This document shows positions 1,109 through 62,156 of a stretch of DNA of 64,000 nucleotides, piece by piece; position 1 is the first letter of the stretch; each line of letters begins with the position of its first letter. This stretch comes from Sphyrna mokarran (Eukaryota): assembly GCA_024679065.1 (NCBI GenBank), contig JAGIQG010000008.1, positions 96,906,001 to 96,970,000 of the forward strand, given 5' to 3'. The notes below the pieces were generated by a model, which saw only the letters and a list, made by a program, of their open reading frames with translations, searched no databases and had not been told where the DNA came from. The position numbers and the translations under genes are program-made.

Positions 1109-1207
1109 AACATATACCGAAAGGAGCAATCATCGGAGGGATCTGTGGCTTTGCTGTATTATGTGTAGTGTGTTTAGGAGTTTATTGCTGGATCAAAAAA
1201 TGTAAAG
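1109..1207 (+). CDS. Paralogue A transmembrane exon, B7-H6/NCR3LG1-like (EHIPKGAIIGGICGFAVLCVVCLGVYCWIKKCK)
   Basis: tttaacag acceptor, G|gtacag donor, 99 nt phase 1-1; hydrophobic stretch followed by basic residues; near-identical to 44717-44815. Confidence 0.88.
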
Positions 1208-3670: not shown

Positions 3671-3727
3671 AACCAAGCAATCGAGAGGAAAGTGAAGATG
3701 AAAGAAGCAAAGCTCCTCTTGTAACAG
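3671..3727 (+). CDS. Paralogue A cytoplasmic micro-exon (EPSNREESEDERSKAPLVT), single copy
   Basis: ttctttcag acceptor, G|gtaaat donor, 57 nt phase 1-1; homologous to the 7 micro-exons of paralogue B. Confidence 0.82.
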
Positions 3728-6141: not shown

Positions 6142-6564
6142 TTCCTCCTATAATTAGTGATATCAAGAAACCACATGAAATTAGTGATGGTGAGGAAACC
6201 ATTCTGCATTGGGACGTTACTGTGTTCAGACCAGAGGTGATGAACATTGTTACATCTGTGAAAAGGAAAGGGCAGCAGGAAGCAAAGAAATTATTTCACT
6301 GGAAAATTTCAGCAGAGATGCTATCAGGACCAAAGAGAATAACTACTCCCATCAAAAATGTATTGAATGGCAAGAAAGACGATTCCTTCAGTGCTGACAC
6401 GCCAGAATTGCAACGCAAACCTGACAGATCTTTCTGCATTCCCTGCTCCATTACATTGTGTCCTGATGTATCCAAGGATGATGGTGCTGAATTAATCATT
6501 GAAGTTAAACGGGATGCCAGTGAGGAAACGTGGACGAAAAGCACAGTATTGAAGATCACAGCAG
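6142..6564 (+). CDS. Paralogue A exon encoding a degenerate C1-set Ig-like domain lacking the canonical cysteines, predicted cytoplasmic
   Basis: ttttgtag acceptor, G|gtaatt donor, 423 nt open, phase 1-1; VPPIISDI...TILHWDVTVFRP...PDRSFCIPCSITL...ELIIEVKR...STVLKIT follows C1 strand order. Confidence 0.8.
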
Positions 6565-33055: not shown

Positions 33056-33107
33056 ATGGGGATTTTATTTTTAAGTGTTGTCGCCATGGCTTTCATTTCA
33101 CCAGCAG
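33056..33107 (+). CDS. NCR3LG1: Paralogue B exon 1, signal peptide (MGILFLSVVAMAFISPA)
   Basis: aggATGg Kozak context; hydrophobic leader; CAG|gtaaga phase-1 donor compatible with the IgV exon. Confidence 0.78.
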
Positions 33108-39802: not shown

Positions 39803-40141
39803 GACCTTTAGAATTGGAGATATTTCCTTCACCACTGGAAGTTTCAGCAAATGAAGATGCTCTTCTAATGTGCAAATTTGATAAACCAGAATACGACCTC
39901 ACACACACAGCTGTTCAATGGATTTTTGGATCACAGACAAACCAGAGAGACATATATGTATTTAATGGAGGAGATCATTACCCAAAGAGAAATGGAGCAA
40001 AGTTGTTCGATGATGCTTTACGGAAAGGAAATGCTTCACTTTACCTTCCAAATGTACAGTTTGATGAAGCAGGAGAATATACATGCATAGTCATTGTTAC
40101 TCCCCAAAAAGAACAAATGAGTTCAGTGATGCAAGTATCTG
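39803..40141 (+). CDS. NCR3LG1: Paralogue B IgV exon, B7-H6/NCR3LG1-like
   Basis: C..W..C V-set pattern; GNASLYLPNVQFDEAGEYTCIVIVTPQK resembles recalled human B7-H6 [28 protein letters not shown]; 339 nt, phase 1-1, G|gtaaga donor. Confidence 0.88.
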
Positions 40142-40275: not shown

Positions 40276-40845
40276 GGGTGGTAGCATGGTGGCAGAGTGG
40301 TTAGCACTGCTGCTTGACAAGTAAATCCACGAGCTTTCGACACTATGTTGTGCCTTCGTCAGGCAAATGCAGTGTTTGCCTGACAAAGGCACAACATAGT
40401 GTCGAAAGCTCGTGGATTTACTATCAAATAAATTGGTTGGATTTTAAATTGGTGTTGCAAAACTTTACTGAGTTTACCCCAGTCCAACGCCGGCATCTCT
40501 ACAGCTTGACAAGTGCCAGGGACCTGGGTTCAATTAGGATCATACGTCATGGTGTTGTGTTAGCACATTCTCCCCATGTCTGCATGGATTTCCTTTGGGT
40601 GCTCCAATTTCCTTCTACATTCCAAAGATGTGATGCTTAGATGAATTGGTCACAGTAAATTGCCCCTTAGAGGCCAAAGATGTGCAGATTGGGTGGTTAG
40701 CCATGGTAGATAGTGTGGGTTATGGGGATGGGACTGCAGGGACGAGAGGGAAGTTTTGGGTAAGATACTCTTTCAGAGAGTTGCTGCAGACTCAATGGGC
40801 TGAATGGCCTCCTTCTGCTCTGTAGGGATTCTATGGTTTTATGGT
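40276..40845 (+). mobile_element. V-SINE interrupted by a Penelope-derived hairpin insertion
   Basis: SINE head at 40276, resuming at 40504; LINE-type tail. Confidence 0.8.
40320..40503. mobile_element. Penelope terminal fragment with a ~100-bp hairpin containing two opposed hammerhead motifs
   Basis: 48-bp arms at 40320-40422 with one mismatch; flanked by an 11-bp repeat gcttgacaagt. Confidence 0.85.
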
Positions 40846-40889
40846 TCTTGTTCACTTGGTGAATCTGAATTCACCAGATAGTAATACAA

Positions 40890-41128
40890 TTACAAAGACA
40901 GTTCGATGGGCTTTTGGATCACAGACAAACCAGAGAGTTATAGATTTATTTGATGGAGGAAATCATTATCCAAAGAGAAATGGAGCAAAGATGTTCACTG
41001 ACGCTTTATGGAAAGGAAATGCTTCCCATTACCTTCCAAATGTACAGGTTGATGAAGCAGGAAAATATACTTGCATAGTCATTGTTACTCCCAAAAAGAA
41101 CAAAAGAGTTCAGTGATGCAAGTATCTG
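40890..41128 (+). pseudogene. Partial duplicate of the IgV exon (pseudo-exon)
   Basis: Homologous to ~39905-40141; lacks the 5' part and first Cys; 1-nt deletion after VTP and a lost G before the donor. Confidence 0.85.
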
Positions 41129-41552
41129 TAAGAAAGTTATATTGGGTGGGTAGCTGTACTAAGACTACAAAGGTCAGTGTGAAGCTTGCATGGGACATCA
41201 AACAGAAGTTTTTTGATTAAATAAATACTCAGGAACAGTTTGACTTTTGAAAACTTATAATGGTGATATTGGGGACGATCTTACCAGAATTTGGCACATT
41301 CACAGTTCTGATGGAAACACTGTGGAAAACCCTCCAGCTTCACTGGCCTGTTTTATTTTCAGGGCTTGTTACTTTAATAGTTAAAAAACAGAGTGGTCGG
41401 GGTTTATGCTGTTGCTCTGGCAGGCAGGGACTCGTAGCGCTGGGAACCATCTCCACAATGACTAGGTGCCCTGATACCAAATAAGAATAAATTCCCATCC
41501 TCACCACAGAGGTATCTGGAGTCTCCTCTTCCCCCCACCACCAGAGGTATGT

Positions 41553-42287: not shown

Positions 42288-42593
42288 TTCAGCCAAAAGT
42301 CAATATGTACTTACAAGAAATTGCAACTGCAGATCGCACAGGGCACTTCTTGGTATGTGATGTGAAGGAATTTTATCCTAAACAAGTCAATATTAGTTGG
42401 TTAATGCTATCAGAAGGAAAAAAGGAATATATTTCAGAAAATCAGTCTGTCGAAGATTTAGTTACGAACAGTGATGGAACGTTTAGTGTTTCCAGTAAAA
42501 TAAGAGTTGAACCAACGTTGGATGATCGCACTAAGTATACATGTGTGGTGAAGCACAAAACCTTTCTTGGCGATTTTACACTGGACTCTGAAG
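42288..42593 (+). CDS. NCR3LG1: Paralogue B IgC1 exon
   Basis: LVCDVKEFYPKQVNISW...NSDGTFSVSS...YTCVVKH C1-set signature; 306 nt, phase 1-1; cacag acceptor and G|gtaagg donor. Confidence 0.9.
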
Positions 42594-44716: not shown

Positions 44717-44815
44717 AGCATATACCTAAAGGAGCAATTATCGGAGGAATCTGTGGCTTTGCTGTGTTATGTATAGCATGTTTAGGAGTTTATTGCTGGA
44801 TCAAAAAACGTAAAG
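44717..44815 (+). CDS. NCR3LG1: Paralogue B transmembrane exon (EHIPKGAIIGGICGFAVLCIACLGVYCWIKKRK)
   Basis: 99 nt, phase 1-1; hydrophobic helix followed by KKRK. Confidence 0.88.
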
Positions 44816-46855
44816 GTACGGTCCTTTTCATTTCCAAAAAGAACTACAAATGCTAAAGTGAGAACTACCTGGATTTTGGATTTTTAAAGGCACTTTGTTT
44901 AAAGAAGCTGAATATCTGTTGTTAATGTATTTAGCTGCAGAAAGGTAATGATTCCTTGGCAAGTAATCGCCATTATTGAATTGCTTTGTTTTTCTAACAG
45001 TGGTTTCAGCTAACATTGGCCAGCTGCAATATGATAATTCTTGGTTCCCTGTTATTCCTTTCATGACAAATGGAGTCATTATGGCACAGAAGGGGGCTAT
45101 TTAGTCTATAAAGTCCAAGCCAACTGTCTGTGCAGTAACCCGGTCAGTCTCCTTCACCTGCTCTATCTCTGTGGCCCTGTAGGTTTATTTTCTTGTGCCC
45201 ATTCAATTCCCTTTTCAAATCATTTATTACTCCCCCCAGTCCCCATTGCAGGTTATTACCACCCGCTGTGTAAAATAACTCTCCTTCACTTTCCTCCTTC
45301 AACTCTTGGCCACAATCTTAATGTGTCAGCCAGCTTTTGTAGCATCAGCCTTTATTGGGGAGTGGGGGGGGCGGGGGGTGGTTTGCATTTTCAGCCCACA
45401 TCCACCATCAGAGATAATGGCAATAAGGATGGAAAATCTGGAGACAATCAGAAAACATGATTTGCTCTACAGAGATCGCGTTTCCCAATTTTCCACACCC
45501 CTTGCCAGTGACATTACAAGGTTCACACCTCAAAAGGATGAGAACCTCATTTTAATGGTTTTAAATAAGTTTTACTATAAATACCTAGCCCCCAACATTA
45601 TCTCACCCTCACTGAATATTCAAACTTTGCTGACGTGATATCACACCACTTCAGGGACACAAAGGTAAGCGTAAGCCTTCGGGGGAGAGGGATGTGACCT
45701 GGCACTGCCCCTTGGCACTGCTCTGTCGCATATGCCACAATTTTTCTCTAAGTTGACTCTCACTTTCTAATTCCAGGTGTAGCCTTCAATAGTGTTGGGA
45801 TTTCCTGCCACTCTAAGACCAAGTTGGTGGAGAACTCATCCCTGCTTTGTAGGGCAGTCCTGTACTATTCAATGCTCTGAGGAGATAAGTCTGCCTCTGA
45901 CAGCTCCTAATCATCTGATATAACTATGGAATCTTCTATACTACATTGCTACACATTGCTGTCCCTGTATCACCTTCCCCCAACCTACCCCCTCCCCACC
46001 CCCTAACCGTTACCCATGCAATCCTTTGGCCATTGATGCCATGAACTGGAAAGCGCTCTTTCAAGGTGTTGTCAAACATCTGTCTCCAATGATAAGTACC
46101 AGCTTCAGAGTAGCACACACCGTGAAGACGTTCATCTTCCTACTGTTGCTTCCTACTCTTACGGTTTGTTGAACTATGAGGTGGCTACCTCTTGGAACAT
46201 ACAACATAGAAAACTTCCTGATGCTGTGGATTCAGATATCTTCAGCAATTCCCCATTCCCAATAACATCCTTTCAATTCTGTTTTCATCTCCCTAATGTG
46301 TTCCTCTCAGTGGCGATTTGTATGTGTGAAATAATCCAAAGATTACAATCTTTAAGATGCTGACATTCAATTAGCTCCTGAATCCTGATTGTTTCCAAAT
46401 AGGATCTGAATCCTACTCTTTACCATGTTGTTTATCCTGACATGGATGGCAATGACGGGATCCATCTGTTCATCTCCAACAACATTACATACCAATTAGA
46501 AATGTACCTCACCCTGGCACTGGTGGACAACAAACCAAATGGGACTCTGGTCCTGCTTACAAAGAACGCTATCTGTCCCCTTAATTATTGAATCTCCCAC
46601 AAATATCACGCTAATCTTCATCTCCTTCCTTAACTTCTGACATTCTGCTGCTCCAATGCTACCATAATGGTGATCTGTCTGAATATCCACACTGGTAGCA
46701 GAAATATTGTGCCTATTAAATAGGATCAGTTTCTATGGTTTCTATCCAACCTGTATTCTGCTTAATCTACACACAATTAGTCACAGCAATCTTTTTCGGA
46801 ACTTGCACTTCTTTATAAGCTATCATCAAAGTCTAGTTAAAAGTGGTCAAGTACA

Positions 46856-47110
46856 TGGATAGCACAGTGGCAGAGTGGGTAGTACAGCTGCCTCACAGCT
46901 CCAGGACCTGGGTTTGATTCTGGTTTTGGCTGTCTGTGTGGAGTTTGCACGTTGACTCAGTGTTCGTGTAGGTTTCCTCCAGATGCTCCAGTTTCCTCCC
47001 AGGCTGTAAAGACGTACAGATTAGGTAGATCAGTAATGCTAAATTGCCAGTTAATGTTCAAGATCTGTAGGTTAAATGGACTGGCCATGGGATAGGATGG
47101 GGGATTCTAC
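46856..47110 (+). mobile_element. V-SINE, present only in the first array unit
   Basis: Head and V-core; absent from later units and from paralogue A. Confidence 0.8.
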
Positions 47111-47742
47111 TGCTTCCACCCTTATGTGTCAGAGTGCCTCCAGTTCACAATCCAACTCAATGATTCTGTGTTCAGGCAATTTGATACACAGCAGACGTAT
47201 TTGTTTGGGGCTATACCAAGATCCAGAATCATTCACCTACTGCATTCCAGACAGAAATCCTGCTCTGCTTTGAATTAATATAAATTTTATAATCATCAGA
47301 GATTTGGTTCTGATTCATTTTACTTGAATGATGGAAGAGTCAAGACAAATGTTTCATTTGAGTTATATCAAAAGTTCCTAATATAAGGTGTTGAAACGAG
47401 AATCTAGAAGGGCATAGTTATAAAATTCTCACATTCAGGAATTTCTTGTTTGTTAAAGTTTATTTGTTAATTACAATTAGGCTTACATTAATGCTACAAA
47501 GAAGTTACTGTCAAATTCCCCTAGTTACCACAGTCCGGCTCAATGCATGTCTTTCAGAATGCTCGGAGGAAACCAGAGCACCTAGAGGAAACTTACTCAG
47601 ACCCGTGGAGAACTTGCAAAACTCCACACAGAAAGTGACTTAAGCCAGGAATTAAACCTGGGTGCCTGGTGCTGTGAAGTAGCAGGGCCAACCAGTGTGC
47701 CATTGTGCCTGTTAATGTATTTTGATTGCATTGTTGTTTCAG

Positions 47743-47796
47743 GACCAGGCAAACCAGAGAAAAGTGAAGATGAAAGGAGCAGAGCTCTTCTAAGAG
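47743..47796 (+). CDS. Micro-exon 1 (GPGKPEKSEDERSRALLR)
   Basis: ttgtttcag acceptor, G|gtaaat donor, 54 nt. Confidence 0.8.
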
Positions 47797-49701
47797 GTAA
47801 ATATTTACGCTGAGTACTGACTTTCTTTTTACAGCAGTTCATTCTGAACTTAGGCATACATTTAACAGCAGTTATGGAAGAGAGGCAATTTTCAGCTTGT
47901 GTTTGCTGTCAGAGTGAATGGCAATTGAGGATGGAAAACCTGGAGAGAATTGGGAATCCCAATTCTCCCTGGAAAATATTTCCCCATGTTCCATATCCCT
48001 TGCCCATGACATCACAAGGTTCATACATGGTCAAGAACCTCATTTTAACGGATTTAAATACATTTTTCTCGATTTACAAAGCTACCTCACATCACCCCAT
48101 CCTCACTGTATATTCAAACCTTGCTGACATATCAAAGTAGTGAATCTTCCCCTGAGGACATTGGTTCCAGTGCTGTTGACGCCCCCCCACAATCCCTTCT
48201 CCCCCACTCCACCCCCTCTCCCTCCCTCCCCACTACCACCATCATTCAATCCTTTATCCATTGAAGGTGAACTGGACTGCAATCTTGCCACTCATCGCCT
48301 CCAGTGATGAGTAACAGATTCACGGTGACACAAACACTTCTGTTTCTTGCTACTCTTCTGGTTTGTTGTACATTTTCTATCCTGAACTTTTACTGCCTAT
48401 GAGATGGCCACCTCTTGGAAAGTATGATCCAGGAAACTCCCTGATGCTGTGAAGTAACTTCAGATATCCTTCAACAATTCCCCTCTCCCAAAACCATATG
48501 TGCACCTCCCCAAAGTGTTCATCTCAATGTCAATTTGTCAATGGGAAATAATCCAGAAATTATAATCATTGGCGTGTTGTCCTTCAATTACTCCTGGATC
48601 CTGATAGTTTCCAAATAGGATCTCGTTCCTACTCTTTACCATTGTTGTTTATTCTAAAATGAATGGCAATGACGGGATCCATCTGTTCATCTCCAATATT
48701 ATTTCATGCCAGTTTGAAATGTTCCCCACCCCAGCACTGGTTAGACAACAAACCAAATAAAACTGCTTTTTCTGCCTACAAAGAGTGTCTCCTTAAGCAT
48801 TTAATCTCCTAGAAGAAGCACTAATCTTCTTCTTCTCCCCCTACTTTTGACAGCTTGCTCTGCAATGCTGTTATTATTCCAATTTTGTCTATCTGTCTAA
48901 ATATCCACACTGGTAGCAGGTATGTTGTGCCTGTCAGATAGGATCAATTTCCATTGTCTGTATCTAACCTGTGCTCCCCTTAATTTACATACAGTTGGAC
49001 ACAACAACCTTATTCTGAAGTTGCACTCCTTTATGAACTGTCACCAAAGTCTAGATAAAAGTGGCTAGGTATTCTTTCCACCCTTATGTGTCAAGGTGCC
49101 TACACTTCACAATCCAGCTTAATGGTTCTGAGCCAGAGAAATTTGAGATGCAGATATCCACAGAAGATATGTTCATTGGGGCTATCTCACAGCCCAGAAT
49201 CACTCATCTCCTGTGGCTCAGACAGAGAACCTGCTCTGCTATAACTTAGTAAAAAATTTTATAAACATCAGAGGTTTGGTTCTGTTTCATTCTATTGAGT
49301 GATGGAATGGTTGAGACAAATGTTTCATTCAAGTTATATCAAAAATTCCGAATACAAGGTGTTGAAATGAGAATATAGAATGGCATCGTTACAACATTTT
49401 CACATTTGAGATTAGTTGTTAAAACTTATTACTCAATCACAAGCAGGCTTACATTAAAACTGCAGTGATGAAACTCTGAAATTCCCCTAATCTAGTGCCT
49501 GTAACCAGCATGTCTTTCAGAATGGAGAGAGGAAACCGGAACACCCTAAGGAAACCCATGCAGACACGAGGAGAATGTGCAAAACTTCACACAGTGACCC
49601 AAGCCAGGAATTAAACCCAGGTTCCAGGTGCTATGAAGTAGCAGTGCTGACTGCTCTGTCACCATGCCTGTTAATGTATTTTGATTGTATTGTTGTTTCA
49701 G

Positions 49702-49758
49702 GGCCAGGCAGACCAACAAAGAATGAAGATGAAAGCAGCAGAGCTCCACTTTTAAAAG
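49702..49758 (+). CDS. Micro-exon 2 (GPGRPTKNEDESSRAPLLK)
   Basis: Intact splice sites, 57 nt. Confidence 0.78.
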
Positions 49759-51624
49759 GTAAATACTTAAGCTGAGTATGCAGTTTCTATTCTTAGCAGT
49801 CAACTCTGAATTCAAAGATATACTTAACAGCAATTATGGAGGGGGGGGAGACAATTTTCAGCCTGCTTTTGCTGTCGAAGTGAATGGCGATGATGATGGA
49901 AAACATGGACAGAATCGGGAAGCACAATTTTCATCAGAAATGTCATATTTTTCCATTTTCCATACCTCTAGCCAGTAACATTACAAGGTTCACACCTACA
50001 AAGGTCAAGAACTCATGTTAATGGATTTAAATAAATTTTGTTCCAATTACCCAGTCTTCCCGCATGACCCCACGCTCGCTGAATATTCCAACCTTGCTGA
50101 CATACTAAAGTAGTGAATCCTCGCCCGAGGACATTGGTCCCAGTTCTGTTGAGAGCTATGTCCAATATCCCATACTATCTGGAACTTATGATGATGGTGA
50201 CAGAATGCCTGTCTGTCTCTGTAACAATGGAATCTTCTGTACTGCATTCCCACACATTCTCTATCCCCCTGCCCCCATCCCCAGCCCATCCCACTACCAT
50301 TAAATCTTTTGTTCATTGAGGCCATGAGTTGGAATGTACTTTTTTGGAGTGTTGTCATCCATTGACTCCAATGATGAACAGCTTCAAGTGGCACACACAC
50401 TTCTGTCTCTTCCAACTCTTTTGATTTGTTATACATCTTCCATCCTGAACTCTTACTGCTTATGAGGTGGCCATCTCTTGGAAAGTATGATCCAAAAAAC
50501 TCCCTGATGCTGTGAAGTGACTTCCGATGTCCTTCAACAACTCCCCTTTCCCATAACCATGTGTTTATCTCCCTAAAATGTTCAATCCAAAGGCGATTTG
50601 TAGGTGGGAAATAATCCAGAGATTATAATCTTTGAGATGCTGTTCTTCAATTAGTTCCTGGATCCTGATAGTTTCCAAATAGGATCTCATTCCTTCACTT
50701 TACAATGTTGTTTTTATCCTCAAATTAATTGTAATGACGGGATCCCATCTGTTCATCTCCAATATTTCATGCCAATTTGAAATGTTCCCCATCCCAGCAC
50801 TGGTTAGACAACAGACCAGATGAAACTTCTGTCTGCAAAGAATGCTATCTGTCTCCTTGTTGTCGAATTTCTTCAAATACCACTAATCTTCTTCTCCTGC
50901 TACTTTAACAGCTTGGTGCTCCATTTAACCTGTGGTCCAATTAATCCAGATACAATTGGTCACAACAACCTTATTCTGAACTTGTACTTTATAAACTGTC
51001 ACCAAAGTCTAGATAAAATTGGCCAGGTATTGTTTCCAACCTTATGTTGACATCCATAGCAGAGATATTCATTGAGTCTATCCTACAGTCCAGAATCATT
51101 TACCTACTGCATTCCAGACAGAAATCCTACTCTGCTTTAACTTAGTGTAAATTTTATAATCATCAAAAGTTTGGTTCTGTTTTATTCCACTTGAATGATG
51201 GAAGATTTAAGACAAATGTTTAATTCGAGTTGTATCAAAAGTTCCAAATACAAAGTATTGAAATGAGAATTTAGAATGGCGTAGTTACAAAACTATGACA
51301 TTTGAGATCCTCTTAAGTTGTTAAAGTTTATTTACTAGTCACGAGTAGGCTTACATTAACAGTGCAATGAAATTAACTGCAAAATTCCCTGAGTCACTAC
51401 TCTGGTGCCTGTCCGGGTCAATGCCTCTAAACCAGCATGTCTTTGTGAATGGTGGAAAGAAATTGGAGCACTTGAAGAAAACCCAGGCAGACAATGGGAG
51501 AATGTGCAAATTTCACATACTCAGTCATCCAAGCCAGGAATTGAACCTGGGTCTTTGTCACTGTGAAGAAGCAGTACTGACTGTTGTGCCACAGTAATAT
51601 ATTTTGATTATTTTGTTGTTTCAG

Positions 51625-51681
51625 GGCCAAGCAAACCAGGGAAAAGTGAAGATGAAAGCAGCAGATCTCCACTTGTAAGAG
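51625..51681 (+). CDS. Micro-exon 3 (GPSKPGKSEDESSRSPLVR)
   Basis: Intact splice sites, 57 nt. Confidence 0.78.
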
Positions 51682-53542
51682 GTAAATACTTATGCTGAGT
51701 ACACAGTTTCTGTTCTTAGCAGTCAATTCTGAATTCAGGGGTATATTTAACAGTAATAATGGGGAGCTGGGAGAAAATTTTTAGCCTGCGTTTGCTGACA
51801 GAGTGAATGCCGATGATGATGGAAAACCTGGACAAAATCGGGAATCCTGATTCTCCCCGGAAATACCATTTTTCCCCATTTTCCACACCATTAACCGGTG
51901 ATATCACAAGGATCACATAGGGTCAAGAACCTCCTTTTCATGGATATAAATACCTTTTTCTCTAATTATCCAGCCACTCCACATGACCCCACCCTCACTG
52001 TATATTCAAACTTTCTGACATACCAAAGTAATGAATCTTCCCCCTAGGTCATTGGTCCTAGTCCTGTTGACCCACCCAAATCCTTTCTCCCCTGCCCCAC
52101 TACCATCACAATTCAATCCTTTGTCCATTGAGGCCATGAGCTAGTATGCACTTTTTCAAGGTGTTGCAACCCATTGTCTCTAATAATGAGTAACAGTTTC
52201 ACAGTAGCACACACACTTCTGTCCTATTCTTCTGGTTTATTACACATTTTCTATTCCGAACTCTTACTGCCAATGAGGTGGCCACCTCTTGGAAAGTATG
52301 ATCCAGGGAAATCCCTGCTGCTGTAAGTGAATTCAGATGACCTTCAATAATTCCCCTTTCCCATAATCATATGTTCAATTCCCTAAAGTGTTCATCTCAA
52401 TGACGATTTGTCAATGGGAAATAATCCAGAAATTATAATCTTTGAGATGGTGACATTCAATTAGCTCTTGGATCCTGATAATTTCCAAATAGGATCTCAT
52501 TCCTATTCTTTACCATGTTGTTTATTCTAAAATTAATGGCAATAATAGGATCCATCTGTTCATCTCCAACATCATCTTATGCCAGTTTGAAATGTTCCTC
52601 ACCCCGAACATTGGTTAGACAACAAACCAAATAAAACTTCTGATCTTACCTACAAAGAATGTTATCTGGCATCTTAAGCATTTAATCTCTTTTAAATACC
52701 ACTAATCTTCTTCTTCTCCCACTGGTTTTGACAGCTTTCTGCTCCAGTGCTACCATGATTCTGATTGTGTCTGTCTGAATATCCACACTGGTGGTGGGTA
52801 TATTGCACCTTTTAGATAGGTTCAACTTCCATTGTCTCTATCTAACCTGTGATTCCCTTAATCTATACACAATTGGTCACAACAATCTTATTCTGAACTT
52901 GTACTTTTTTGTAAACTGTCACCAAAGTCTAGATAAAAATGACCAGGTATTGTTTCCAACCTTATGTGTCACAGTGCCTCCACTTCACAATCCAGCTCAA
53001 TGATTCTGAGCCAAAGAAATTTGAGATGCAGACATCCACAGCAGATATATTCACTGGGGCTGTCTCACAGTCCAAGGTCATTCACCTGCTCAGTCCAGAC
53101 AGAAAAGCTGCTCTGCTATAACTTAGTAAAAATTTTACGAACATCAGAGATTTGGTTTTGTTTCATTCTATTTGAACCCTGGAAGAGTTGAGACAAATGT
53201 TTCATTTGAGTTGTATCAAAAATTCCAAATACAAGGTGCTGAAATGAGAATCGAGAATGGCATAAGTACAACATTCTCACGTTCATCCTAACTTTATTTA
53301 TCAATCACAAGTAGGTTTACATTAACACTACAATGAAGAAACTGTGCAATTCTCTTAATCCAATGCCTCTAACCAGCACGTCTTTCAGAATGGTGAGAGG
53401 AAACTCGAGCACCCAAAGGAAGCCCATGCAGAGATTGTGCAAACTTCACACAGTGACCCAAGCCAGGAATTGAACCCAGGTCCTGTGCTGACCATTGTGT
53501 CACCATGCCTGTTAATGTATTTTGATTGCATTGTTGTTTCAG

Positions 53543-53605
53543 GGCTAGGCAAACCAGCGAAGAATGAAGATAAAGTTGAAAGTAACATAGCTCCACTTGC
53601 AAGAG
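53543..53605 (+). CDS. Micro-exon 4 (GLGKPAKNEDKVESNIAPLAR)
   Basis: Intact splice sites, 63 nt (in-frame 6-nt insertion). Confidence 0.78.
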
Positions 53606-55553
53606 GTAAATACTTAAGCTGAGTACACAGTTTCTGTTCTGGGCAGTCAATTCTGAATTCAGGGATATTTTTAGCAGCAATTATGCTGGCGGGGAGTGTA
53701 TTTTCAGCCTGCATTTTCTGTCAGAGTGAATGGCGATGACAACAGAAAACCTGAATAGAATCAGGAACCATAATTCTCATCGGTAATATAATATTTCCCC
53801 ATTTTCCACACCCCTCACGGGTGACATCACAAGGTTCACACGTAGAAAGGTCAAGAACCTCATTTTAATGGACTTAAATACATTTTTCTCCAATTACCCA
53901 GCCACCCCACATGACTCCGCCCTCACTGAATATCCAAACCTTGCTGACATACCAAAGAAGTGAATCTTCCCTCGAGGACATTGGTTCCAGTCCTTTTGAG
54001 AGTTATGTCCAATATCCCATACCATCTGGAACTTTTGATGATGGTAATACAATGCCTGTCTGCCTCTGTACCAATAGAATCTCCTATACTGCATTACCAC
54101 ATATCCTGTATCATCCTGTCCACCCGAGCCTACCTTACTCCACTACCAGTGAATCTTTTGTTCACTGTGGCCATGAGTTGGAATGCACTCTTGTCGGGTG
54201 TTGTCATCTATTGTCTCCAATGATGAGTAACAGCTTCACAGTGGTACACACAATAATGTCTCTTCCGACTCTTTTGGTTTGTTATACATCTTCCATCCTG
54301 AACTCTTTCTGCTTATGAGGTGGCCACCTCTTGGAAAGTATGATCCAGGAAACTCCCTGAAGCTGTGAAGTGACTTCAGATGTCCTTCAACAATTCCCCT
54401 CTCCCATAACCATATGTTCATCTTAAAATGTTCAACCCAATGATGATTTGTAGGTGGGAAATAATCCAGAGATCATAATCTTTGAGGTGCTGTTCTTCAA
54501 TTAGCGGCTGGATCCTGACAGTTTCCATATAGGATCTCGTTTGTATGCTTTGACATGTTGTTCATCCTAAAATTAATGGTAATGATGGAATCCATCTGTT
54601 CATCTCCAACATTATTTCATGCCAGTTTGAAATTTTCCCCACCCCACCAATGGTTAGATAGCAAGCCAGATAAAACTTCTGATCCTGCCTATAAATAATG
54701 CTATGTGTCCCCTTATTTGTTGAATGTCCATTAAAAAGCGCTAATCTTCTTCCCCTATTTTTGACAGCTTGCTGCCCCATTTTCTCTGTGCTTCCCTTTA
54801 TCTACATACAACTGGTCACAACAATCTTTTTCTGAACTTGTACTTCTTTATAAACTGTCACCAAAGTCTAGATAAAAGTGGCCAGGTATTGCTTCCAACC
54901 TTATATGTCAGAGTGCCTCCACTTCACAATCCAGCTCAATGATTCTGAGCTAGAGAAATTTCAGATGCAAGTATCCACAGGAGATTTATTCTTTGGGTTT
55001 ATCTCACAGTCCACAACCACTTACCTACTGCATTCCAGACAGAAATCCTACTTTACTCTAACTTACTGTACATTTTATAAACATTAAAAGTTTGGTTCTG
55101 TTTCATTCCACTTGAACGATGGATGATTTGAGTCAAATATTTAATTCGATTTGTATCAGAAGTTCTGAATATGAGGTTTGAAATGAGAATCTAGAATGAC
55201 ATAGTTACAAAATTCTCACATTTGGGATCGTCTTAAGTTGTTAAAGTTTATTTATTAGTCACAAGTAGGCTTACATTAACATGGAATGAAATTAACTGCA
55301 AAATTCCCTGAGTCAGCACTTTCTGGTGCCTGTCCGGGCCAATGCCTCTAAACTCAGCATGTTTTTGTGAATGGTGGGAAGAAACTGGAACACGTGAAGA
55401 AAACCCACACAAACGTGGGGATAACATGCAAACTTCACATACACAGTGACCCAAGCCAGGAATTGAACCTGGGTTCCTGGCACTGTGTAGAAGCAGTGCT
55501 GATGATTGTGCCACCATGACTGTTAACGTATTTTGATTATATTATTGTTTCAG

Positions 55554-55610
55554 AGCCAGACAAACCAGGGAAAAGTGAAGACGAAAGCAGCAGAGCTCCT
55601 CTTGCAAGAG
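55554..55610 (+). CDS. Micro-exon 5 (EPDKPGKSEDESSRAPLAR)
   Basis: Intact splice sites, 57 nt. Confidence 0.78.
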
Positions 55611-55902
55611 GTAAATACTTGTACTGAATACACAGGTTTTGTTTTTAACTCAGGCATACATTTAACAGCAATTATGGAGGGGAAGCAATTTTCAGCCTGC
55701 ATTTGGTATCAGAGTGAATGGCGATGAGAATAGAATATCTGGAGAGAATCGGGAATCCCAGTTCTCCCCGGAAAGATCATGTTTCCCCAAACTTCACTGC
55801 CCTCGCCAATGATATCACAAGGTTCATACCTAAAAGATTGAGAACCTCATTTCAATGGATTTAAATAATTTTTTCTCTAATTACCCAGCCACCTCACTTG
55901 AC

Positions 55903-56900
55903 TCAAAGAACAAAACAGCATGGGAAACGGGCCCTTTGGCCCAAGAGCCCGCGCCACCACCCAATGTTCCCACTTCTCCCCATGATCCCTGTCTATGTTT
56001 ATAGATCTATGCATTGGAACCAAATTTGCAAGACAATTTTGGCAAAACAAATTCTCCCTATCAGCCTAAGAGCACATCTTTGGGGTGTGGGAGGAAACTG
56101 GAGCACCTGGAGAAAACCCATGCAAGCACGGGAAGAATGTGCAAACTCCTACAGACACAGGCCCAAATCCATGTATCTGCACAGCACAATGATAGTCACT
56201 GAGCTGTCGTGTTGCCCATCAACTGGTCCAGTTCAAGTGTATAGTAACAACGTGAAGCACTAGGCTATTCTCGAAAAATCCAAAGCAGCCCTCTCATGAC
56301 CCATCGCGTGTATGCCCTTGTTAAACAACAAGGCGGACCGAAGTACCTGTAGGATAAAACAGAAATACATCAATATCATTGACAATTTACACACTTCCCA
56401 GGGAACTCCCAAGGCTCATGATTCCTATTTTAAATCAGTCTCCTATATCCATCCATTCCCATTCTGTTCATGTGTCCATCTAAGTGTTTCTTAAATAACT
56501 CCAGGGTGCCTGCCTCCACCACCTTACTTGGCAGTGTGTTCCATATCCCCACAACCCTCTGTGTGAAAAGACTCCCTCCAGCATCCAAATTATACCTTAC
56601 CCCCCTCACCCTAAGCCCGTGACCCCTCGTGATATTTGAGTCCAACCTAGGAAAAAGCTTAACCCTGTTTACTCTATCTATACCCCTCATAATCTTGTAT
56701 ATCTCTATTAGATCTCCTCTACGTCTACGTCTTTCTAAGGAAAACAGTCCCAATTTGCCTAACCTCTCCTTGTAACTCAGACCTTCCATACCAGGCAGCA
56801 TCCTAGTAAACCTCCTCTGCACTCTGTCCAGAGTCTCCACGTCCTTCTGGTAGTAAGGCAACCAGAACTGGAGACAGTATTCCAAATGAGGTCTAACCAG
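55903..56900 (-). mobile_element. 5'-truncated CR1 with V-core 3' UTR inserted in the array
   Basis: ORF 56430-56903; UTR homologous to 35376-35897. Confidence 0.93.
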
Positions 56901-57745
56901 CATTCTGTACCCTCAATGAGTATTCAAACCTTGCTGACATACCAAAATAGTGAATCCTCCCCCGAGGACATTGATCCCAGCCCTATTGACCCCTCCCTCA
57001 ATCCCTTGTGCCCCTTCCACCCTCTACCACTTCCACCATCATTCAATCCATTGTCCATTGAGGGTGAGCTCGAATGCAATCTTTCAGGGTGTTGCCATCC
57101 ATCGTCTCCAATGATGAGTAACAGATTCACGGCAATACAGACATTTCTGCCTCTTTTGACTCTTCTGGTTTGTTGCACATTTTCTATCTTGAACTCTTAC
57201 TGTCTATGAGGTGGCCACCTCTTCGAAAGTATGATCCAGGGGACTCCCTGATGCTGTGAAGTGACATCAGATGTTCTTCAACGATTCCCCTCTCCATAAC
57301 CATGTGCTCACCTCTCTAAAGTGTTCATCCCAATGATGATTTGTAAGTGGGAAATAATCCAGAGATTATAATCTTTAAGGTGTTGTCCTTCAATTAGCTC
57401 CTTTATCCTGATAGTTTCCAAACAGGATCTCGTGCCTACTCTTTACTGTGTTGTTTATTCTAAAGTTAGTGCTAATGACGGGATCCATCTGTTCATCTCC
57501 AACATTATTTCATGCCAATTTGAAATGTTCCTCACCCCAGCACTGGTTAGACAACAAACCAAATAAAACTCCTGATTCTGCCTACAAAGAATGCTATCTG
57601 TCCCCTTAAGCATTTAATCTCTTATAAATACCACTAATCTTGTTCTTCGCCCCCAACATTTGACAGCTTGCTGCTCCAGTGCTGTCATTATTCCGATTCT
57701 GTACATCTGTCTGAATATTGACACTGGTAGCAGGTATATTGTGGC

Positions 57746-57946
57746 TTTTTTTTTGTTTTTATTCCAATTCAATCCAATCAAGTCCAATTCAGTGTCTGAA
57801 CAAGTTGAGACATTCACGATCCAAGCTGACAAGACAGTGCTCTGACCTCTTGGGTTCGATCCACGTGATCCAAGTTGACTGGAGTAGGTATCGCTCCTCC
57901 TCCAAGGCACAATCTCATTTGCATCTTAGCCAAAAGGTGGAGATGC
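57746..57946 (-). mobile_element. Short A-tailed retroposon with a U2 snRNA-like 5' head
   Basis: Minus strand starts GCATCTCCACCTTTTGGCTAAGATG (U2: GCTTCTCGGCCTTTTGGCTAAGATC) and ends AATAAAAACAAAAAAAAA; absent from the other array units. Confidence 0.6.
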
Positions 57947-58729
57947 TGCTTTTAAAAATTGCTTAGATAGGATCAATTTCCTTTGTCTCTATCTAACCTG
58001 TGCTCCCTTTAATCTACACACAATTAGTCACAACAACCTTATTCTGAACTTGTACATTATTATAAACTGTCACCAAAGTCTAGATAAAAGTGGCCAGGTA
58101 TTGTTTCCAGCCTTATGTGTCAGAGTGCCACCACTTCGCAATCCACTTAATGATCCTGAATCAGAGAAATTTGAGATGCAGACATCCACAGAAGATATAT
58201 TCACTGGAACTATCTCCCAGTCAAAGACCACTCACCTCCTGCAGCCCAGACAGAAAAGCTGCACTGGTATAACTTAGTAAAAATTTGTAAAAAATCAGAG
58301 ATTTGGTTCTGTTTCATTCTATTTGAACGATGGAAGATTTGAGACAAATGTTTCGTTCAAGTTGTATCAAAAATTCTGAATACAAGGTGTTGAAATGAGA
58401 GTCTAGAATGGCATTGTTGCAACATTTTCACATTCAGAGTCCACTTGTTAAAATTTATTTATTAATCACAAGTAGGATTACATTAACACTGCAATGAAGT
58501 TATTGTGAAATTCCCTTAGTCAATGCCTCATACCAGCACATCTTTCAGAATAGTGAAAGGAAACTTGAACACTCTAAAGAAACCCATGCTGACACGAGGA
58601 GAATGTGCAAAACTTCATACAATGACCCAAGCTGGGAATTGAACCCAGATCCCAGGCACTGTGAAGTAACAGCGCTGACCACTCTGCTGCCATGCCTGTT
58701 GACGTGTTTTGTTTGCATTGTTGTTTCAG

Positions 58730-58786
58730 GGCCAGGCAAACCAGTGAAGAATGAAGATGAAAATAGCAGAGCTCCCCTTGTAGGAG
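58730..58786 (+). CDS. Micro-exon 6 (GPGKPVKNEDENSRAPLVG)
   Basis: Intact splice sites, 57 nt. Confidence 0.78.
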
Positions 58787-59729
58787 GTAAATACTTATGC
58801 TGAGTACATAGTTTCCGTTCTTAGCAGTTAATTCTGAATTTTTAACAGCAATTATGGAGGGGTGGGGGGACAAATTTCAGTCTGCATTTGCTGTCAGAGT
58901 GAATGATAATGGAAAACCTGGTGAGAATCAGGAAGCACAATTCTCTTCAGAAATATCATATTTCCCTATTTTCCACATCCCTCTCCAGTGATGTCACAAG
59001 ATTCATCCTACAAAGATTGAGAACCTTTTTTTTATGAATTTAAATAAATTTTTCTCCAATTACAGGGCCATCCCACATGACTCCATCCTCACTGAGTATT
59101 CCAACCTTGCTGACATATCAAAGTGGTGAATGTTCCCTTGAGGACATTGATCCCAGTCCTGTTGACCCACCCTACCAATCCCTTTCCCACCCCACCGCAC
59201 TATCACCACCATCCAATGCTTGTCCATTGAGGCTGAATTGGAATGCAATATTTCCAGTTGTTGCCATCCATGTCTCCAATGATGAGTAACAGCTTCACGG
59301 TGACACAAACACTTCTATCTCTTCCTGCTCTTCTTTTTTATTGTACATCTTCAATCCTGAACTCTTACTGTCTATGAGATGGCAGTGTCTTGGAAAGCAT
59401 GATCCAGGAAACTCACTGATGCTGTGAAGTGACCTCAGATATCCTTCAACAGTTTCTCGCTCCCAAATGCATGTCTTCACCTCCCTAAAGATTTCATCCT
59501 AATGATGATTTGTAGGTGGGAAGTAATCCAGAGATTATAATCTTTGAGATGGTATCTTTCAATTAGCTCATAGTTTCCAAATAGAATCTTGTTCCCACTC
59601 TTTACCATGTTGTTTATTCTAAAGTTAATGGCAATAATGGGATCTAATTGTTTATCTCCAAGATCGTTTCATGTCAGTTTGAAATGTTCCCCACCTCATC
59701 ATTGGTTAGACAACAAACCAGATGAAACG

Positions 59730-59987
59730 TTGGGAGTTTGCGCGTTCTCCCCGTGCTTGCGTGGGTTTTCTCCGGGTGCTCCGGTATCTTCCCACATCCC
59801 AAAGATGTGCTTTTAGGCTAATTGGCAAAACAAATTCTCCCTAAATTGTCTCAAATTTGGTTTTTAATCCATAGATCTATAAACATAGACAGGGATCACG
59901 GGTAGAGGTGGGAACATCGGGGTGGCAACGCGGGCTCGTTGGGCCGAAGGGCCTGTTTCCAGTGCTGTTTTGTTCTTTGTTCTTTGT
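59730..59987 (+). mobile_element. Short 5'-truncated CR1 3' UTR (V-core plus tail)
   Basis: Matches 35650-35897. Confidence 0.88.
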
Positions 59988-60825
59988 CTGATCCTGTGTG
60001 CAAAAAATGCTATCTGTCCCCTTATTTGTTGAATGTCCTTCAAATACCATTAATCTTCTTCTTTCTCCTCCTACTTTTGAAAGCTTGCTGCTCCATCTAA
60101 ACTGTGCTCTCTTTAATCTACATACAATTGGTCACAACAACTTATTCTGAATTTGTACTTCTTTATGAACTATCACCAAAGTCTAGATAAAATTGGCCAA
60201 GTATTGTTTGCAACCTTATATGTCAGAGTGCCTCCACTTCACAATCCAGCTCAATGCTTCTGAGCCAGAGAAATTTGAGATTCAGGCATCCACAGAAGAT
60301 ATATTCATTGAGTTTATCTCACAATCCAAGAACATTCACCTCCTGCAGCCCAGATAGAAAACTTGCCCTGCTATAACTTAGCAAAAATTTTATAAACATC
60401 AAAGATTTTGTTCTGTTTCATTGTATTTGAACAATGGAAAGTTGAGACAAATGTTTCATTTGAGTTGTATCAAAAATTCCAAATACAAGGTGTTGAAGTG
60501 AGAATCTAGAATGGTGTAGTTACAACATTCTCATATTTGGGATCCTCCTTAGTTGTTAAAATTCATTTACCAATCACAAGTAGGCTTACATTAACACTGC
60601 AATGAAGTAACTGGGAAATTCCCCTTGTCCAATGCCTCTAACCAGCACCTCTTTCAGACTGGTGCAACAAAACTGGAACACCCTAAGGAAACACATGCAG
60701 ACGCAAGGAGAATGTGCAGAAGTTCACACAGTGACCCAACTCAGGTTCCAGGCACTATGAAGTAGTAGTGTTAACCAGTCTGTGACTGTGCCTTTTAATA
60801 TATTTTGATTACATTGTTGTTTCAG

Positions 60826-60882
60826 GGCTGGGCAAACCAGCGAAGAATGAAGATGAAAGTAGCAGATCTCCACTTGTAAGAG
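60826..60882 (+). CDS. Micro-exon 7 (GLGKPAKNEDESSRSPLVR)
   Basis: Intact splice sites, 57 nt. Confidence 0.78.
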
Positions 60883-62156
60883 GTAAATACTTATGCTGAG
60901 TACACAGTTTCTGTTCTCAGCAGTCAATTCTCAATTCAGGGATACATTTAATAGCAATTATGGGTCGGGGGTGGGTGGAGACAATTTTCAGCCTGCATTT
61001 GCTATCAGAGTGAATGGCGATAATGATGAAAAACCTGGAGAAAACCAAGAAGCACAATTCTCATTGGAAATGTCACATTTCCCTACTTTTCACACCCCTC
61101 ACTGGTAACATCACAAGGTTCACACCTACAAAGGTCAAGAACCTCATTTTAATGGATTTAAATACATTTTTCTCTAAATACCCAGCCATTGCACATGACC
61201 CCACCCCTCACTGAATATTCAAACGTTGCTGACATATCAAAGTAGTGACTCTTCCCCTGAGGACATTGATCCCAGTCCTGTTGAGAGCTATGCCCAATAT
61301 CCCACACTATCTGGAATTTGTGATGATGGTGACAGAATGCCTGTCTGCCTCTGTAACAGTGGAATCTCCTGTACTGCATTACCACACATTCTCTATCCCC
61401 CTGCCCCCATCCCCAGCCCATTCCACTACCATTAAATCTTTTGTTCATTGAGGCCATGAGTTGGACTGCACTCTTTTGCGGTGTTGTCACCCATCGTCTC
61501 CAATGATGAGTAACAGCTTCACAGCGACACATACACTTCTATCTGTTCCTACTCTTTTGGTTTGTTGCACATCTTCTATCCTGAACTCTTACTGCTTATG
61601 AGATGGCCGCCACTTGGAATGTATAATCCAGGAAACTCCCTAATGCTATGAATGTCCTTCAACAATTCCCCTTTCCCATAACCATGTGTTCACCTCCCTA
61701 AAATGTTCAACCCAATAATGATTTGTATGTTGGAAATAATCCAGAGATCATAATCTTTGAGGTGCTGTTCTTCAATTAACTCCTGGATTCCAAATAGGAT
61801 CTTGTTCCTACGCTTTACCATGTTGTTCATCCTAAAATTAATGGTAATGACGGGATCCCTCTGTTCATCTCCAACATTATTTCATGCCAGTTTGAAATGT
61901 TCCTCACCCCAGCACTGGTTAGACAACAAAGCAGATGAAACCTCTGATCCTGTCTACAAAGAATACTATCTGTCCCCTTAATTGTTAAATGTCCTTCAAA
62001 TACCACTAATCTTCTTCTCCCCCTACTTTTGACAGCTTGCTGCTCCATCTAACCAGTGCTCCCCTTAATCTAGATACAATTGGTCATACAATTCTGAACT
62101 TCTATTCCTTTATAAACTGTCACCAAAGTCTAGATAAAAGTGGCCAGATATTATTC

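What the first reader, a model, noticed from the sequence alone, without database searches (positions are those of the whole stretch)
47743..60882. Array of at least 7 symmetric micro-exons building a repetitive, tunable cytoplasmic tail
Seen: all 7 copies keep tttcag and G|gtaaat splice sites, have no stops, and show only frame-preserving length changes (54, 57, 57, 63, 57, 57, 57 nt), while the surrounding introns carry many indels. Paralogue A has one copy. Inference: selection to keep the exons coding. Phase 1-1 symmetry lets any subset be included, so splicing or copy number could tune motif dosage or the spacing between membrane and the cytoplasmic Ig domain, which is expected beyond the window end.
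Basis: partly seen in the sequence, partly recalled or inferred. Interest (0 to 1): 0.85.

Follow-up and report, generated by a model that had tools for sequence, protein, structure and literature searches.

The report
Seven tandem micro-exons, shark B7 gene
A shark immune-receptor gene of the B7 family carries seven tandem copies of a tiny 57-base exon that would repeat a 19-residue unit in its intracellular tail, a layout that recalls chicken BG genes but whose use in RNA is still unproven.

Summary
Seven exon-like segments (54, 57, 57, 63, 57, 57, 57 nt) lie about 2 kb apart at 47743-60882, each between TTTCAG and G|GTAAAT. An eighth lies in the neighbouring gene at 3671-3727. They follow leader, IgV, IgC1 and transmembrane exons of a B7-H3/B7-H6-like gene, all in phase 1.

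Selection is visible on splicing and frame only. Both 9-nt splice motifs are invariant, while 48% of intron columns are. Both exon indels are multiples of 3, against 5 of 47 in introns.

The peptide itself drifts near-neutrally: exon identity is 83.9% against 78-80% in introns, Fisher p = 0.12, and pN/pS is 0.88.

The 19-residue unit is the family's linker before a post-membrane Ig-like domain. RefSeq models of other sharks use it in tandem runs of one to four, and their isoforms skip single units, domains and even the transmembrane exon.

Closest known: chicken BG tails built from 21-nt exons. Verdict: a real, probably coding array, a new variant of a known kind. The first stage also noted this stretch in another read (s1-886677).

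The parts
33056..33107 (+). Gene B leader (signal peptide) exon, ends in phase 1 before GTAAGA
   Evidence: Short tblastn with the N-termini of relatives, plus an ATG/hydrophobic/donor scan; sequence read.
39803..40141 (+). Gene B IgV exon, 339 nt, phase 1-1
   Evidence: Pfam V-set E = 1.6e-11. 90% identical to Mustelus asterias P0052. Best solved relatives are CD276 (2.6e-15) and NCR3LG1 (2.4e-13). Borders read.
40778..41133 (+). Relic of a duplicated V exon with an in-frame stop; probably not used
   Evidence: tblastn gives 57% identity to the P0052 V domain, with a stop in the aligned stretch. Weak V-set hit, E = 0.0053.
42288..42593 (+). Gene B IgC1 exon, 306 nt, phase 1-1
   Evidence: Pfam C1-set E = 4.6e-14. 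82% identical to P0052. Borders read.
44717..44815 (+). Gene B transmembrane exon, 99 nt, phase 1-1, ending in K-K-R-K
   Evidence: Sequence; tblastn to the P0052 transmembrane segment.
47109..62155 (+). Tandem array of the ~2 kb unit (7 units). Each has a SINE-like insert upstream of its micro-exon. Spacing between micro-exons: 1959, 1923, 1918, 2011, 3176 and 2096 nt
   Evidence: Local blastn of one unit against the window; alignment; exon coordinates.
47743..47796 (+). Micro-exon B1, 54 nt
49702..49758 (+). Micro-exon B2, 57 nt
51625..51681 (+). Micro-exon B3, 57 nt; 89% identical in peptide to a Mustelus linker
53543..53605 (+). Micro-exon B4, 63 nt (6-nt insertion); the most divergent copy
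55554..55610 (+). Micro-exon B5, 57 nt
58730..58786 (+). Micro-exon B6, 57 nt
60826..60882 (+). Micro-exon B7, 57 nt
1109..1207 (+). Gene A transmembrane exon (the gene's Ig exons lie before the window start)
   Evidence: tblastn 79% to P0052; sequence.
3671..3727 (+). Gene A single micro-exon, positional homologue of B1
6142..6564 (+). Gene A post-membrane Ig-like domain exon, 423 nt, phase 1-1. This is the kind of exon expected after the array in gene B
   Evidence: Splice sites. 39 homologues. AlphaFold2 pLDDT 92.4. Ig-fold matches in the PDB.

Best explanation
The seven segments are real, splice-competent coding exons of a cartilaginous-fish B7-H3/B7-H6-like type I membrane protein (gene B).

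Origin and layout. The ancestral gene had one 57-nt linker exon between the transmembrane exon and a post-membrane Ig-like domain exon, as gene A still has. In gene B, a ~2 kb genomic unit holding that exon was amplified to at least seven tandem copies, probably by unequal crossing-over (inferred). Every exon of the gene is in phase 1-1, so each copy adds 18-21 residues in frame. Any subset can be skipped without breaking the frame.

Predicted product. It would be a proline-, lysine-, glutamate- and serine-rich stretch just inside the membrane, probably disordered, of up to about 134 residues. Each repeat has an invariant acidic E-D-E core, and most have a PxxPxK stretch.

What selection acts on. 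It has acted on splice sites and reading frame, not on most residues. That fits a spacer or multivalent docking tail whose length or number of short motifs matters more than its exact sequence.

Shown: anatomy, phases, the conservation pattern, and homology of the unit to linkers used in RefSeq models of other sharks. Inferred: inclusion in mRNA, disorder, and the spacer or docking role.
For: - Eight copies against 0.04 expected by chance, and exactly eight by profile search.
- All exons from leader to transmembrane are intact and in phase 1.
- The copy tree is star-like, with 0.075-0.13 changes per site on each end branch and 0 of 5 inner branches supported. The copies have therefore diverged independently.
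- At this divergence 48.0% of intron columns are invariant (325 of 677). Yet the 9 columns at the acceptor and the 9 at the donor are all invariant. They are two of only three invariant runs of 9 columns in the 1434-column alignment. p^18 = 1.8e-6, and p^4 = 0.053 for the AG/GT cores alone.
- Introns carry 47 copy-wise indel events in 834 columns, and only 5 are multiples of 3. The exons carry 2 events (-3 and +6). (5/47)^2 = 0.011. About 2.9 frameshifting events were expected in the 7 exons, which gives Poisson P(0) = 0.06 (my arithmetic).
- Relatives use the unit. Mustelus asterias XP model P0052 has one unit after the membrane and two in tandem between its Ig-like domains, 79-89% identical in peptide to B3, B5, B6 and B7. 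Heterodontus francisci has one unit before each of 7 domains, plus 3 or 4 in tandem at the C-terminus.
- Predicted isoforms differ by exactly one 26-residue unit, one 141-residue domain, or the 31-residue transmembrane exon.
Against: - There is no RNA evidence for this array. The only run offered held 8% of the sampled words and is only guessed to be RNA.
- No database protein of 377-1200 residues carries such an array apart from P0052 itself.
- The exon body is not significantly more conserved than intron (p = 0.12). pN/pS is 0.88. Invariant sites by codon position are 13, 7 and 12 of 18. Nothing shows that the peptide sequence matters.
- Freedom from stops is expected by chance in 27-44% of neutral runs.
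- The invariant GAAGA..GAAA core could be kept as a purine-rich splicing enhancer rather than as residues (inference).
- The 3' end of gene B lies outside the window, after transposon sequence, so the gene's integrity is unknown.
- The RefSeq isoforms of relatives are computer models. I could not see their read support.
Confidence: 0.6

Rival explanations
1. Only one or a few copies (for instance B1, the positional homologue of gene A's exon, or the last copy) are spliced. The others are duplicated exon look-alikes that sit unused in a long intron.
For: Sequence conservation of the exon bodies is statistically the same as that of the introns, and pN/pS is 0.88. The largest tandem run in any relative's model is 4 units, not 7. 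B4 is visibly divergent, with a 6-nt insertion and changed residues. No transcript was seen.
Against: Unused copies should have lost splice sites and frame at the intron rate. With 10% divergence per copy, P = 0.053 for keeping the four core splice bases in all 7 copies, 1.8e-6 for the 18 invariant columns, and about 0.06 for keeping the frame. The star-like tree argues against recent homogenisation by gene conversion.
Confidence: 0.2
2. Gene B is a decaying or truncated member of a multigene cluster. The array is then a by-product of unequal crossing-over in a pseudogene and has no present function.
For: A V-exon relic with a stop lies inside the gene at 40778-41133. LINE and SINE insertions lie inside units, one unit is stretched to 3176 nt, and transposon ORFs follow the last unit. 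No downstream exon is visible in the window. The family evolves by fast gain and loss, with tails that differ strongly between species.
Against: The leader, IgV, IgC1 and transmembrane exons are all open, with canonical AG/GT borders in the right phase, and are 82-90% identical to the Mustelus protein. The same splice-site and frame arguments apply as above.
Confidence: 0.13
3. The conserved blocks at the unit borders serve something other than splicing of coding exons, for instance a repeated regulatory or RNA element. The open frame would then be incidental.
For: Freedom from stops is not significant. Some intron windows are as conserved as the exon (15.5% of 909).
Against: The invariant blocks are a textbook acceptor (pyrimidine tract plus CAG) and donor (AG|GTAAAT) set 54-63 nt apart. 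The unit is homologous in peptide to linkers in annotated proteins of several sharks. No Rfam family matches 49600-64000 at gathering scores.
Confidence: 0.03

Closest known systems
Chicken BG genes (butyrophilin/B7 superfamily), with cytoplasmic tails encoded by arrays of 21-nt exons
   Same: Both are B7-superfamily type I membrane proteins. In both, the cytoplasmic tail is built from many short exons of equal length that preserve the frame. [quoted passage not shown]
   Different: BG exons are 21 or 24 nt and encode heptads thought to form a coiled coil. Here the exons are 57 nt, with 1-3 prolines per 17-20 translated residues (1 in B4 and B7) and no heptad pattern, so a disordered tail is more likely. 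BG has a single V domain; here there is IgV plus IgC1. The shark units sit in ~2 kb introns that carry transposons. Expression is proven for BG and not here.
Uncharacterised chondrichthyan IgV-IgC1-TM proteins with post-membrane Ig-like domains (RefSeq models such as Mustelus asterias LOC144499029, Heterodontus francisci XP_067902348, Cetorhinus maximus LOC144684897, Scyliorhinus torazame XP_072322181)
   Same: The ectodomain is the same (82-90% identity to the Mustelus model). So is the transmembrane exon, the 19-residue linker unit with an acidic core, and the 141-residue Ig-like domain in gene A.
   Different: In those models the linker occurs singly or in runs of 2 to 4, usually before each Ig-like domain. 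Outside Mustelus it is often followed by a second unit of 6-7 residues. Gene B has 7 linker exons in a row with no domain between them, the longest run seen here.
Human B7-H6 (NCR3LG1) and B7-H3 (CD276)
   Same: The IgV exon's best solved relatives are CD276 (E = 2.6e-15) and NCR3LG1 (2.4e-13). The second domain is C1-set, and NCR3LG1 is among its matches. One catshark relative is named NCR3LG1-like by NCBI.
   Different: Orthology is not established. As I recall it (not from any call), the human B7-H6 tail is a single exon-derived segment related to retroviral Gag. It has no repeated micro-exons and no Ig-like domain.

Membership tests
B7 family (B7-H3/B7-H6-like) | Ectodomain of one IgV followed by one Ig constant-type domain, then a single transmembrane segment | tested here: met
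   V-set E = 1.6e-11 and C1-set E = 4.6e-14. The transmembrane exon ends in KKRK.
B7 family (B7-H3/B7-H6-like) | Closest sequence relatives among characterised proteins are B7 members | tested here: met
   The top solved-structure hits for the V exon are CD276 and NCR3LG1, then VTCN1, CAR and PD-L1.
B7-H6 (NCR3LG1) orthologue | Specific orthology: closer to B7-H6 than to other B7 members, linkage to NKp30, binding of NKp30 | tested here: inconclusive
   CD276 scores slightly better than NCR3LG1 for the V exon. NCR3LG1 is one of many C1 hits. Linkage and binding could not be tested. The key paper (Flajnik et al. 2012) is not held.
BG/butyrophilin-type tail made of arrays of small exons | Cytoplasmic tail encoded by a series of short, frame-preserving exons of equal length | tested here: met
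   Seven exons of 54-63 nt, phase 1-1, downstream of the transmembrane exon.
BG/butyrophilin-type tail made of arrays of small exons | 21-nt (heptad) periodicity predicting a coiled coil | tested here: not met
   The unit is 17-20 translated residues with 1-3 prolines, and 80-94% of its residues are disorder-promoting.
BG/butyrophilin-type tail made of arrays of small exons | B30.2/PRY-SPRY domain after the repeats (butyrophilins proper) | not tested
   The end of gene B lies outside the window. Relatives end in Ig-like domains and acidic tails, not B30.2.
Chondrichthyan IgV-IgC1-TM-linker-Ig-like family | The 19-residue linker exon with an acidic core directly after the transmembrane exon | tested here: met
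   Genes A and B both have it. Profile hits to the three linkers of P0052 have E = 3.7e-7 to 1.1e-12.
Chondrichthyan IgV-IgC1-TM-linker-Ig-like family | Post-membrane 141-residue Ig-like domain | tested here: inconclusive
   Met for gene A: exon 6142-6564, 39 homologues, pLDDT 92.4, Ig-fold matches. For gene B no such exon lies within the window.

The most novel reading that the evidence does not exclude
Cartilaginous fishes have a B7-H6-like receptor family whose whole post-ectodomain part is a kit of phase 1-1 modules: transmembrane exon, 19-residue linkers and disulfide-less Ig-like domains. Genomic amplification and cassette splicing of these modules together set how many linkers and intracellular Ig-like domains a cell displays, and whether the protein is anchored or secreted. 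On this reading, gene B's seven-linker array is a lineage-specific expansion that makes a multivalent, phosphorylatable docking platform (SH3-type PxxPxK plus acidic serine sites), and exon inclusion sets its valency.
Probability: 0.25. Interest if true: 0.75.

Novelty: new variant of a known kind. Interest (0 to 1): 0.5.

Why it matters
B7-family ligands are usually thought of as ectodomains with unremarkable tails. Chicken BG genes are the main exception: there, tail exon number varies between genes and has been linked to function. A second, independent case would strengthen the idea. It lies in the oldest jawed vertebrates and uses a different unit (57 nt, proline-rich, next to post-membrane Ig-like domains). 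It would suggest that modular, copy-number-variable tails are a recurrent way of diversifying signalling or anchoring in this superfamily. It also offers a clean natural test of how arrays of symmetric micro-exons are kept spliceable while their coding sequence drifts. The family is unnamed in the databases seen here ('uncharacterized protein'), and my paper searches found no description of it.

Tried and rejected
- Array in the protein database. A search with the two-linker region of P0052 found only P0052 itself among 20 candidates. A blank says nothing about proteins outside 377-1200 residues.
- Profile of the eight window peptides. It recognises only the Mustelus linkers and one marginal site. 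Homology to the Heterodontus, Cetorhinus and Scyliorhinus linkers rests on position in the protein and on reading the sequences by eye.
- Freedom from stops as evidence of selection: rejected, because 27-44% of neutral simulations also stay open.
- Higher-order two-unit repeat (alternating S-type and N-type copies). The blast identities suggested it, but the tree of 360-nt segments does not support it: 0 of 5 inner branches are supported. Left open.
- Motifs. I looked by eye for dileucine [DE]xxxL[LI] and TRAF-type motifs (consensus recalled, no call) and found no fit. PxxPx[KR] is present in 5 of 7 array copies, and [ST]xx[DE] in 4 of 7. Both are leads only.
- Pfam gives no family for the post-membrane domain. 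DUF7462 and PH_29 are below cut-off or are made of sub-threshold stretches.
- Rfam finds nothing in 49600-64000 at gathering scores.
- Papers. Four searches found nothing on shark B7-H6 tails or cytoplasmic Ig domains. For PMC10751288 and PMC12227049 I read only the matching passages, and neither describes such tails. Ohta & Flajnik 2015 and Flajnik et al. 2012 are not held, so a prior description there cannot be excluded. Supplements were not opened. Figures S2, S7 and S11 of PMC4046983 may bear on the BG comparison.
- The spliced model was never joined. Exons were searched one by one. No joined tail was folded or searched, so disorder of the tail is inferred from composition only.

Full report
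**Observation.** The pattern TTTCAG-N(50-66)-GGTAAAT occurs 8 times on the + strand, against 0.04 expected. None of 100 shuffles reaches 8. Seven matches lie at 47743-60882 and one at 3671-3727. After removing the splice motifs the segments are 54, 57, 57, 63, 57, 57, 57 nt, and 57 nt in the outlying copy. With two bases completing a codon at the start and one base left at the end (phase 1-1), all eight translate without stops into 17-20 whole codons, plus one residue split across the border. The peptides look like P-G-K-P-x-K-S/N-E-D-E-S-S-R-A-P-L-V-R. A nucleotide profile of the eight copies finds exactly these eight in the window (E <= 3e-24; next best E = 3.2). The window has no N and no soft-masking.

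**The repeat unit.** The copies are not isolated. A local blastn of one 2-kb stretch against the window shows a tandemly repeated unit of about 2 kb, alignable over introns at 75-83% identity, from about 47109 to 62155. Spacings between micro-exons are 1959, 1923, 1918, 2011, 3176 and 2096 nt. The long one holds a LINE fragment (ORF 56433-56912 on the minus strand). Every array unit has a SINE-like insert just upstream of the acceptor. The single unit of the neighbouring gene lacks it, so the insert predates the amplification.

**The host gene.**
- Upstream on the same strand lie a leader exon (33056-33107), an IgV exon (39803-40141; Pfam V-set 1.6e-11) and an IgC1 exon (42288-42593; C1-set 4.6e-14).
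- A transmembrane exon follows (44717-44815). It ends K-K-R-K, then one G, then GT.
- All have AG/GT borders and phase 1.
- A broken relic of a second V exon, with a stop, lies at 40778-41133.
- By the positive-inside rule (established knowledge), the basic stretch after the hydrophobic segment puts everything downstream in the cytoplasm.
- The V exon's best solved relatives are CD276/B7-H3 (2.6e-15) and NCR3LG1/B7-H6 (2.4e-13). NCR3LG1 is also among the matches of the C1 exon.
- This is a B7-family gene. Orthology to B7-H6 is not settled.

**The neighbouring gene (A).** It starts before the window. Within the window it shows a transmembrane exon (1109-1207), one micro-exon (3671-3727) and a 423-nt phase 1-1 exon (6142-6564). 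A 203-3280 aligns with B 43808-46834 at 81.5%. A's micro-exon is therefore the positional homologue of B1.

**Is there selection?**
- *Divergence between copies.* A tree of 360-nt segments is star-like. None of 5 inner branches is supported, and end branches are 0.075-0.13 changes per site. The copies have diverged independently by about 10% each. This matches the share of intron columns invariant in all seven copies, 325 of 677, or 48.0%.
- *Exon bodies are barely better conserved than introns.* Mean pairwise identity is 83.9%, against 78.3% and 79.9% in the 300 columns on either side. Of 909 sliding intron windows, 15.5% are at least as conserved. Invariant columns are 32 of 54, against 325 of 677 in introns (Fisher p = 0.12).
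- *No protein-level signal.* Pooled pN/pS over the 21 pairs is 0.88. Invariant sites by codon position are 13, 7 and 12 of 18, so second positions vary most.
- *Absence of stops says nothing.* Neutral simulations at 8-13% divergence leave all seven copies open in 27-44% of runs.
- *Splice sites are protected.* The alignment has only three invariant runs of 9 columns. Two of them are TTGTTTCAG at the acceptor and AGGTAAATA at the donor. At 48% per column this gives 1.8e-6 for 18 columns, and 0.053 for the four core bases alone.
- *The frame is protected.* Introns carry 47 copy-wise indel events in 834 columns, and only 5 are multiples of 3. The exons carry two events, -3 in B1 and +6 in B4. The chance that both are multiples of 3 is about 0.011. 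About 2.9 frameshifting events were expected across the seven exons, giving Poisson P(0) of about 0.06 (my arithmetic).
- *Conclusion.* Splice sites and frame have been protected; most residues have not. The one invariant peptide core, E-D-(x)-E, is encoded by GAAGA..GAAA in exons that are 67-72% purine, against 49-53% in the flanks. It could be kept as a splicing enhancer as much as for the protein (inference).

**What the unit is.**
- A phmmer search of gene A's 140-residue exon product against 1.84 billion representatives gave 39 proteins at E <= 0.001, 16 at <= 1e-10 and 10 at <= 1e-30.
- The strong hits are RefSeq 'uncharacterized' models from Heterodontus francisci, Scyliorhinus torazame and S. 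canicula, Stegostoma tigrinum, Callorhinchus milii, Heptranchias perlo, Mobula and Rhinoraja.
- Weaker hits come from Latimeria and frogs.
- The shark and ray models among them that I read have the same IgV-IgC1-TM start, followed by one to seven copies of this domain.
- With a 15-row alignment, the domain folds confidently (pLDDT 92.4, pTM 0.85). It is an Ig-like sandwich: Foldseek matches are myelin P0, nanobody V domains, and beta-2-microglobulin and MHC C1 domains, at TM 0.45-0.62.
- Pfam does not recognise it.

**The linker in relatives.**
- In these proteins, the segment after the membrane and before each domain is a linker that resembles the window's micro-exon product. Mustelus asterias P0052 is the closest relative (V domain 90% identical). 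It has one unit after the membrane and two in tandem between its two domains. The window profile hits all three (E = 3.7e-7 to 1.1e-12).
- By tblastn, B3 and B5 are 89% identical to the Mustelus unit, B6 83% and B7 79%.
- Heterodontus has a 19 + 6-7 residue version before each of 7 domains, and 3 (isoform X2) or 4 (X1) in tandem at the C-terminus. Cetorhinus and S. torazame have single and double versions.
- Gene B's run of seven with no domain between is the longest seen here.
- A search with the tandem-linker region of P0052 found only P0052 itself, among 20 candidates of 377-1200 residues.

**Cassette behaviour in relatives (predicted models only).**
- Heterodontus X1 and X2 differ by one 26-residue linker unit.
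- Heterodontus X1 and X3 differ by the 31-residue transmembrane exon.
- Stegostoma X1 and X2 differ by one 141-residue domain.
- S. torazame isoforms differ by a domain and a 25-residue linker.

It also raises the possibility of a secreted form. I could not see the read support for these models.

**What I could not get.** The one sequencing run offered held 8% of the sampled words and is only guessed to be RNA. There is therefore no transcript evidence for this array and no orthologous genomic comparison. No joined tail was folded, and disorder is inferred from composition (80-94% disorder-promoting residues; 1-3 prolines per unit).

**Comparison with what is known.** The nearest described system is the chicken BG family. 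BG genes belong to the butyrophilin/B7 superfamily, and their cytoplasmic tails are encoded by 13 to 36 exons of 21 (sometimes 24) nt. [quoted passage not shown] The shark array shares the principle and the superfamily. It differs in unit length (57 nt), in predicted structure (not a coiled coil), and in its link with post-membrane Ig-like domains. Four paper searches found no description of shark B7-H6-like tails or cytoplasmic Ig domains. The two most relevant papers are not held, so prior description cannot be excluded.

**Earlier notes of this scan.** Unchecked first-stage notes describe the same gene cluster: s1-886677, s1-886593, and s1-887014, s1-884563 and s1-886771 further along the same piece. 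I tested only the Ig-like fold of gene A's exon. A note of a U2-derived SINE at 57746-57946 (s1-886713) got no Rfam match at gathering scores.

**Verdict.** The array is most likely a set of live, in-frame cassette exons that lengthen a disordered juxtamembrane tail (confidence 0.6). Selection is on spliceability and frame rather than on sequence. It is a new variant of a known kind. Interest is moderate until RNA data show which copies are used.

Noticed in passing
window 6142-6564 (+): A 423-nt phase 1-1 exon after the transmembrane exon of gene A encodes a confidently folded Ig-like sandwich (pLDDT 92.4). Read by eye in the alignment, it has no canonical disulfide pair. Pfam has no model for it. 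Homologues occur one to seven times per protein in sharks, rays and chimaera, with weak hits in coelacanth and frogs.
   Followed up: partly
P0040 versus P0042 (Heterodontus francisci isoforms X1 and X3): The two RefSeq isoforms differ by exactly the 31-residue transmembrane exon. The 'cytoplasmic' linkers and Ig-like domains may therefore also exist in a secreted form.
   Followed up: no
window 40778-41133 (+): A relic of a duplicated IgV exon lies between the IgV and IgC1 exons of gene B. It is 57% identical to the Mustelus V domain, lacks a recognisable first part, and has an in-frame stop.
   Followed up: partly
window, about 250 nt upstream of each array micro-exon (for instance 47440-47704); absent upstream of 3671: A SINE-like insert is present in all seven array units but not in gene A's unit. 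It entered before the unit was amplified and dates the array relative to the A/B split.
   Followed up: partly
window 62159-62507 and 62567-63999: A 189-nt tandem repeat (1.8 copies) and transposon-like ORFs follow the last unit directly and fill the window to its end. The true 3' limit of the array is therefore unknown.
   Followed up: no
window 57746-57946: A first-stage note calls this a U2 snRNA-derived SINE. An Rfam scan of 49600-64000 at gathering scores found no family at all.
   Followed up: partly
P0052 residues 1-38 (Mustelus asterias model): The model's N-terminus has no signal peptide. It aligns weakly with reverse-transcriptase-like ORFs of the window (12126-12260; 37533-37763 on the minus strand). 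The first exon of that RefSeq model is probably mis-predicted from a transposon.
   Followed up: no
P0004/P0044 (Stegostoma), P0045/P0046 (Chiloscyllium, Hemiscyllium): Orectolobiform relatives replace the 19-residue linker with other tandem repeats of about 36-43 residues rich in Q, E and D. These occur in 1, 2 or 3 copies in different isoforms. Repeat-built tails seem general in the family.
   Followed up: no
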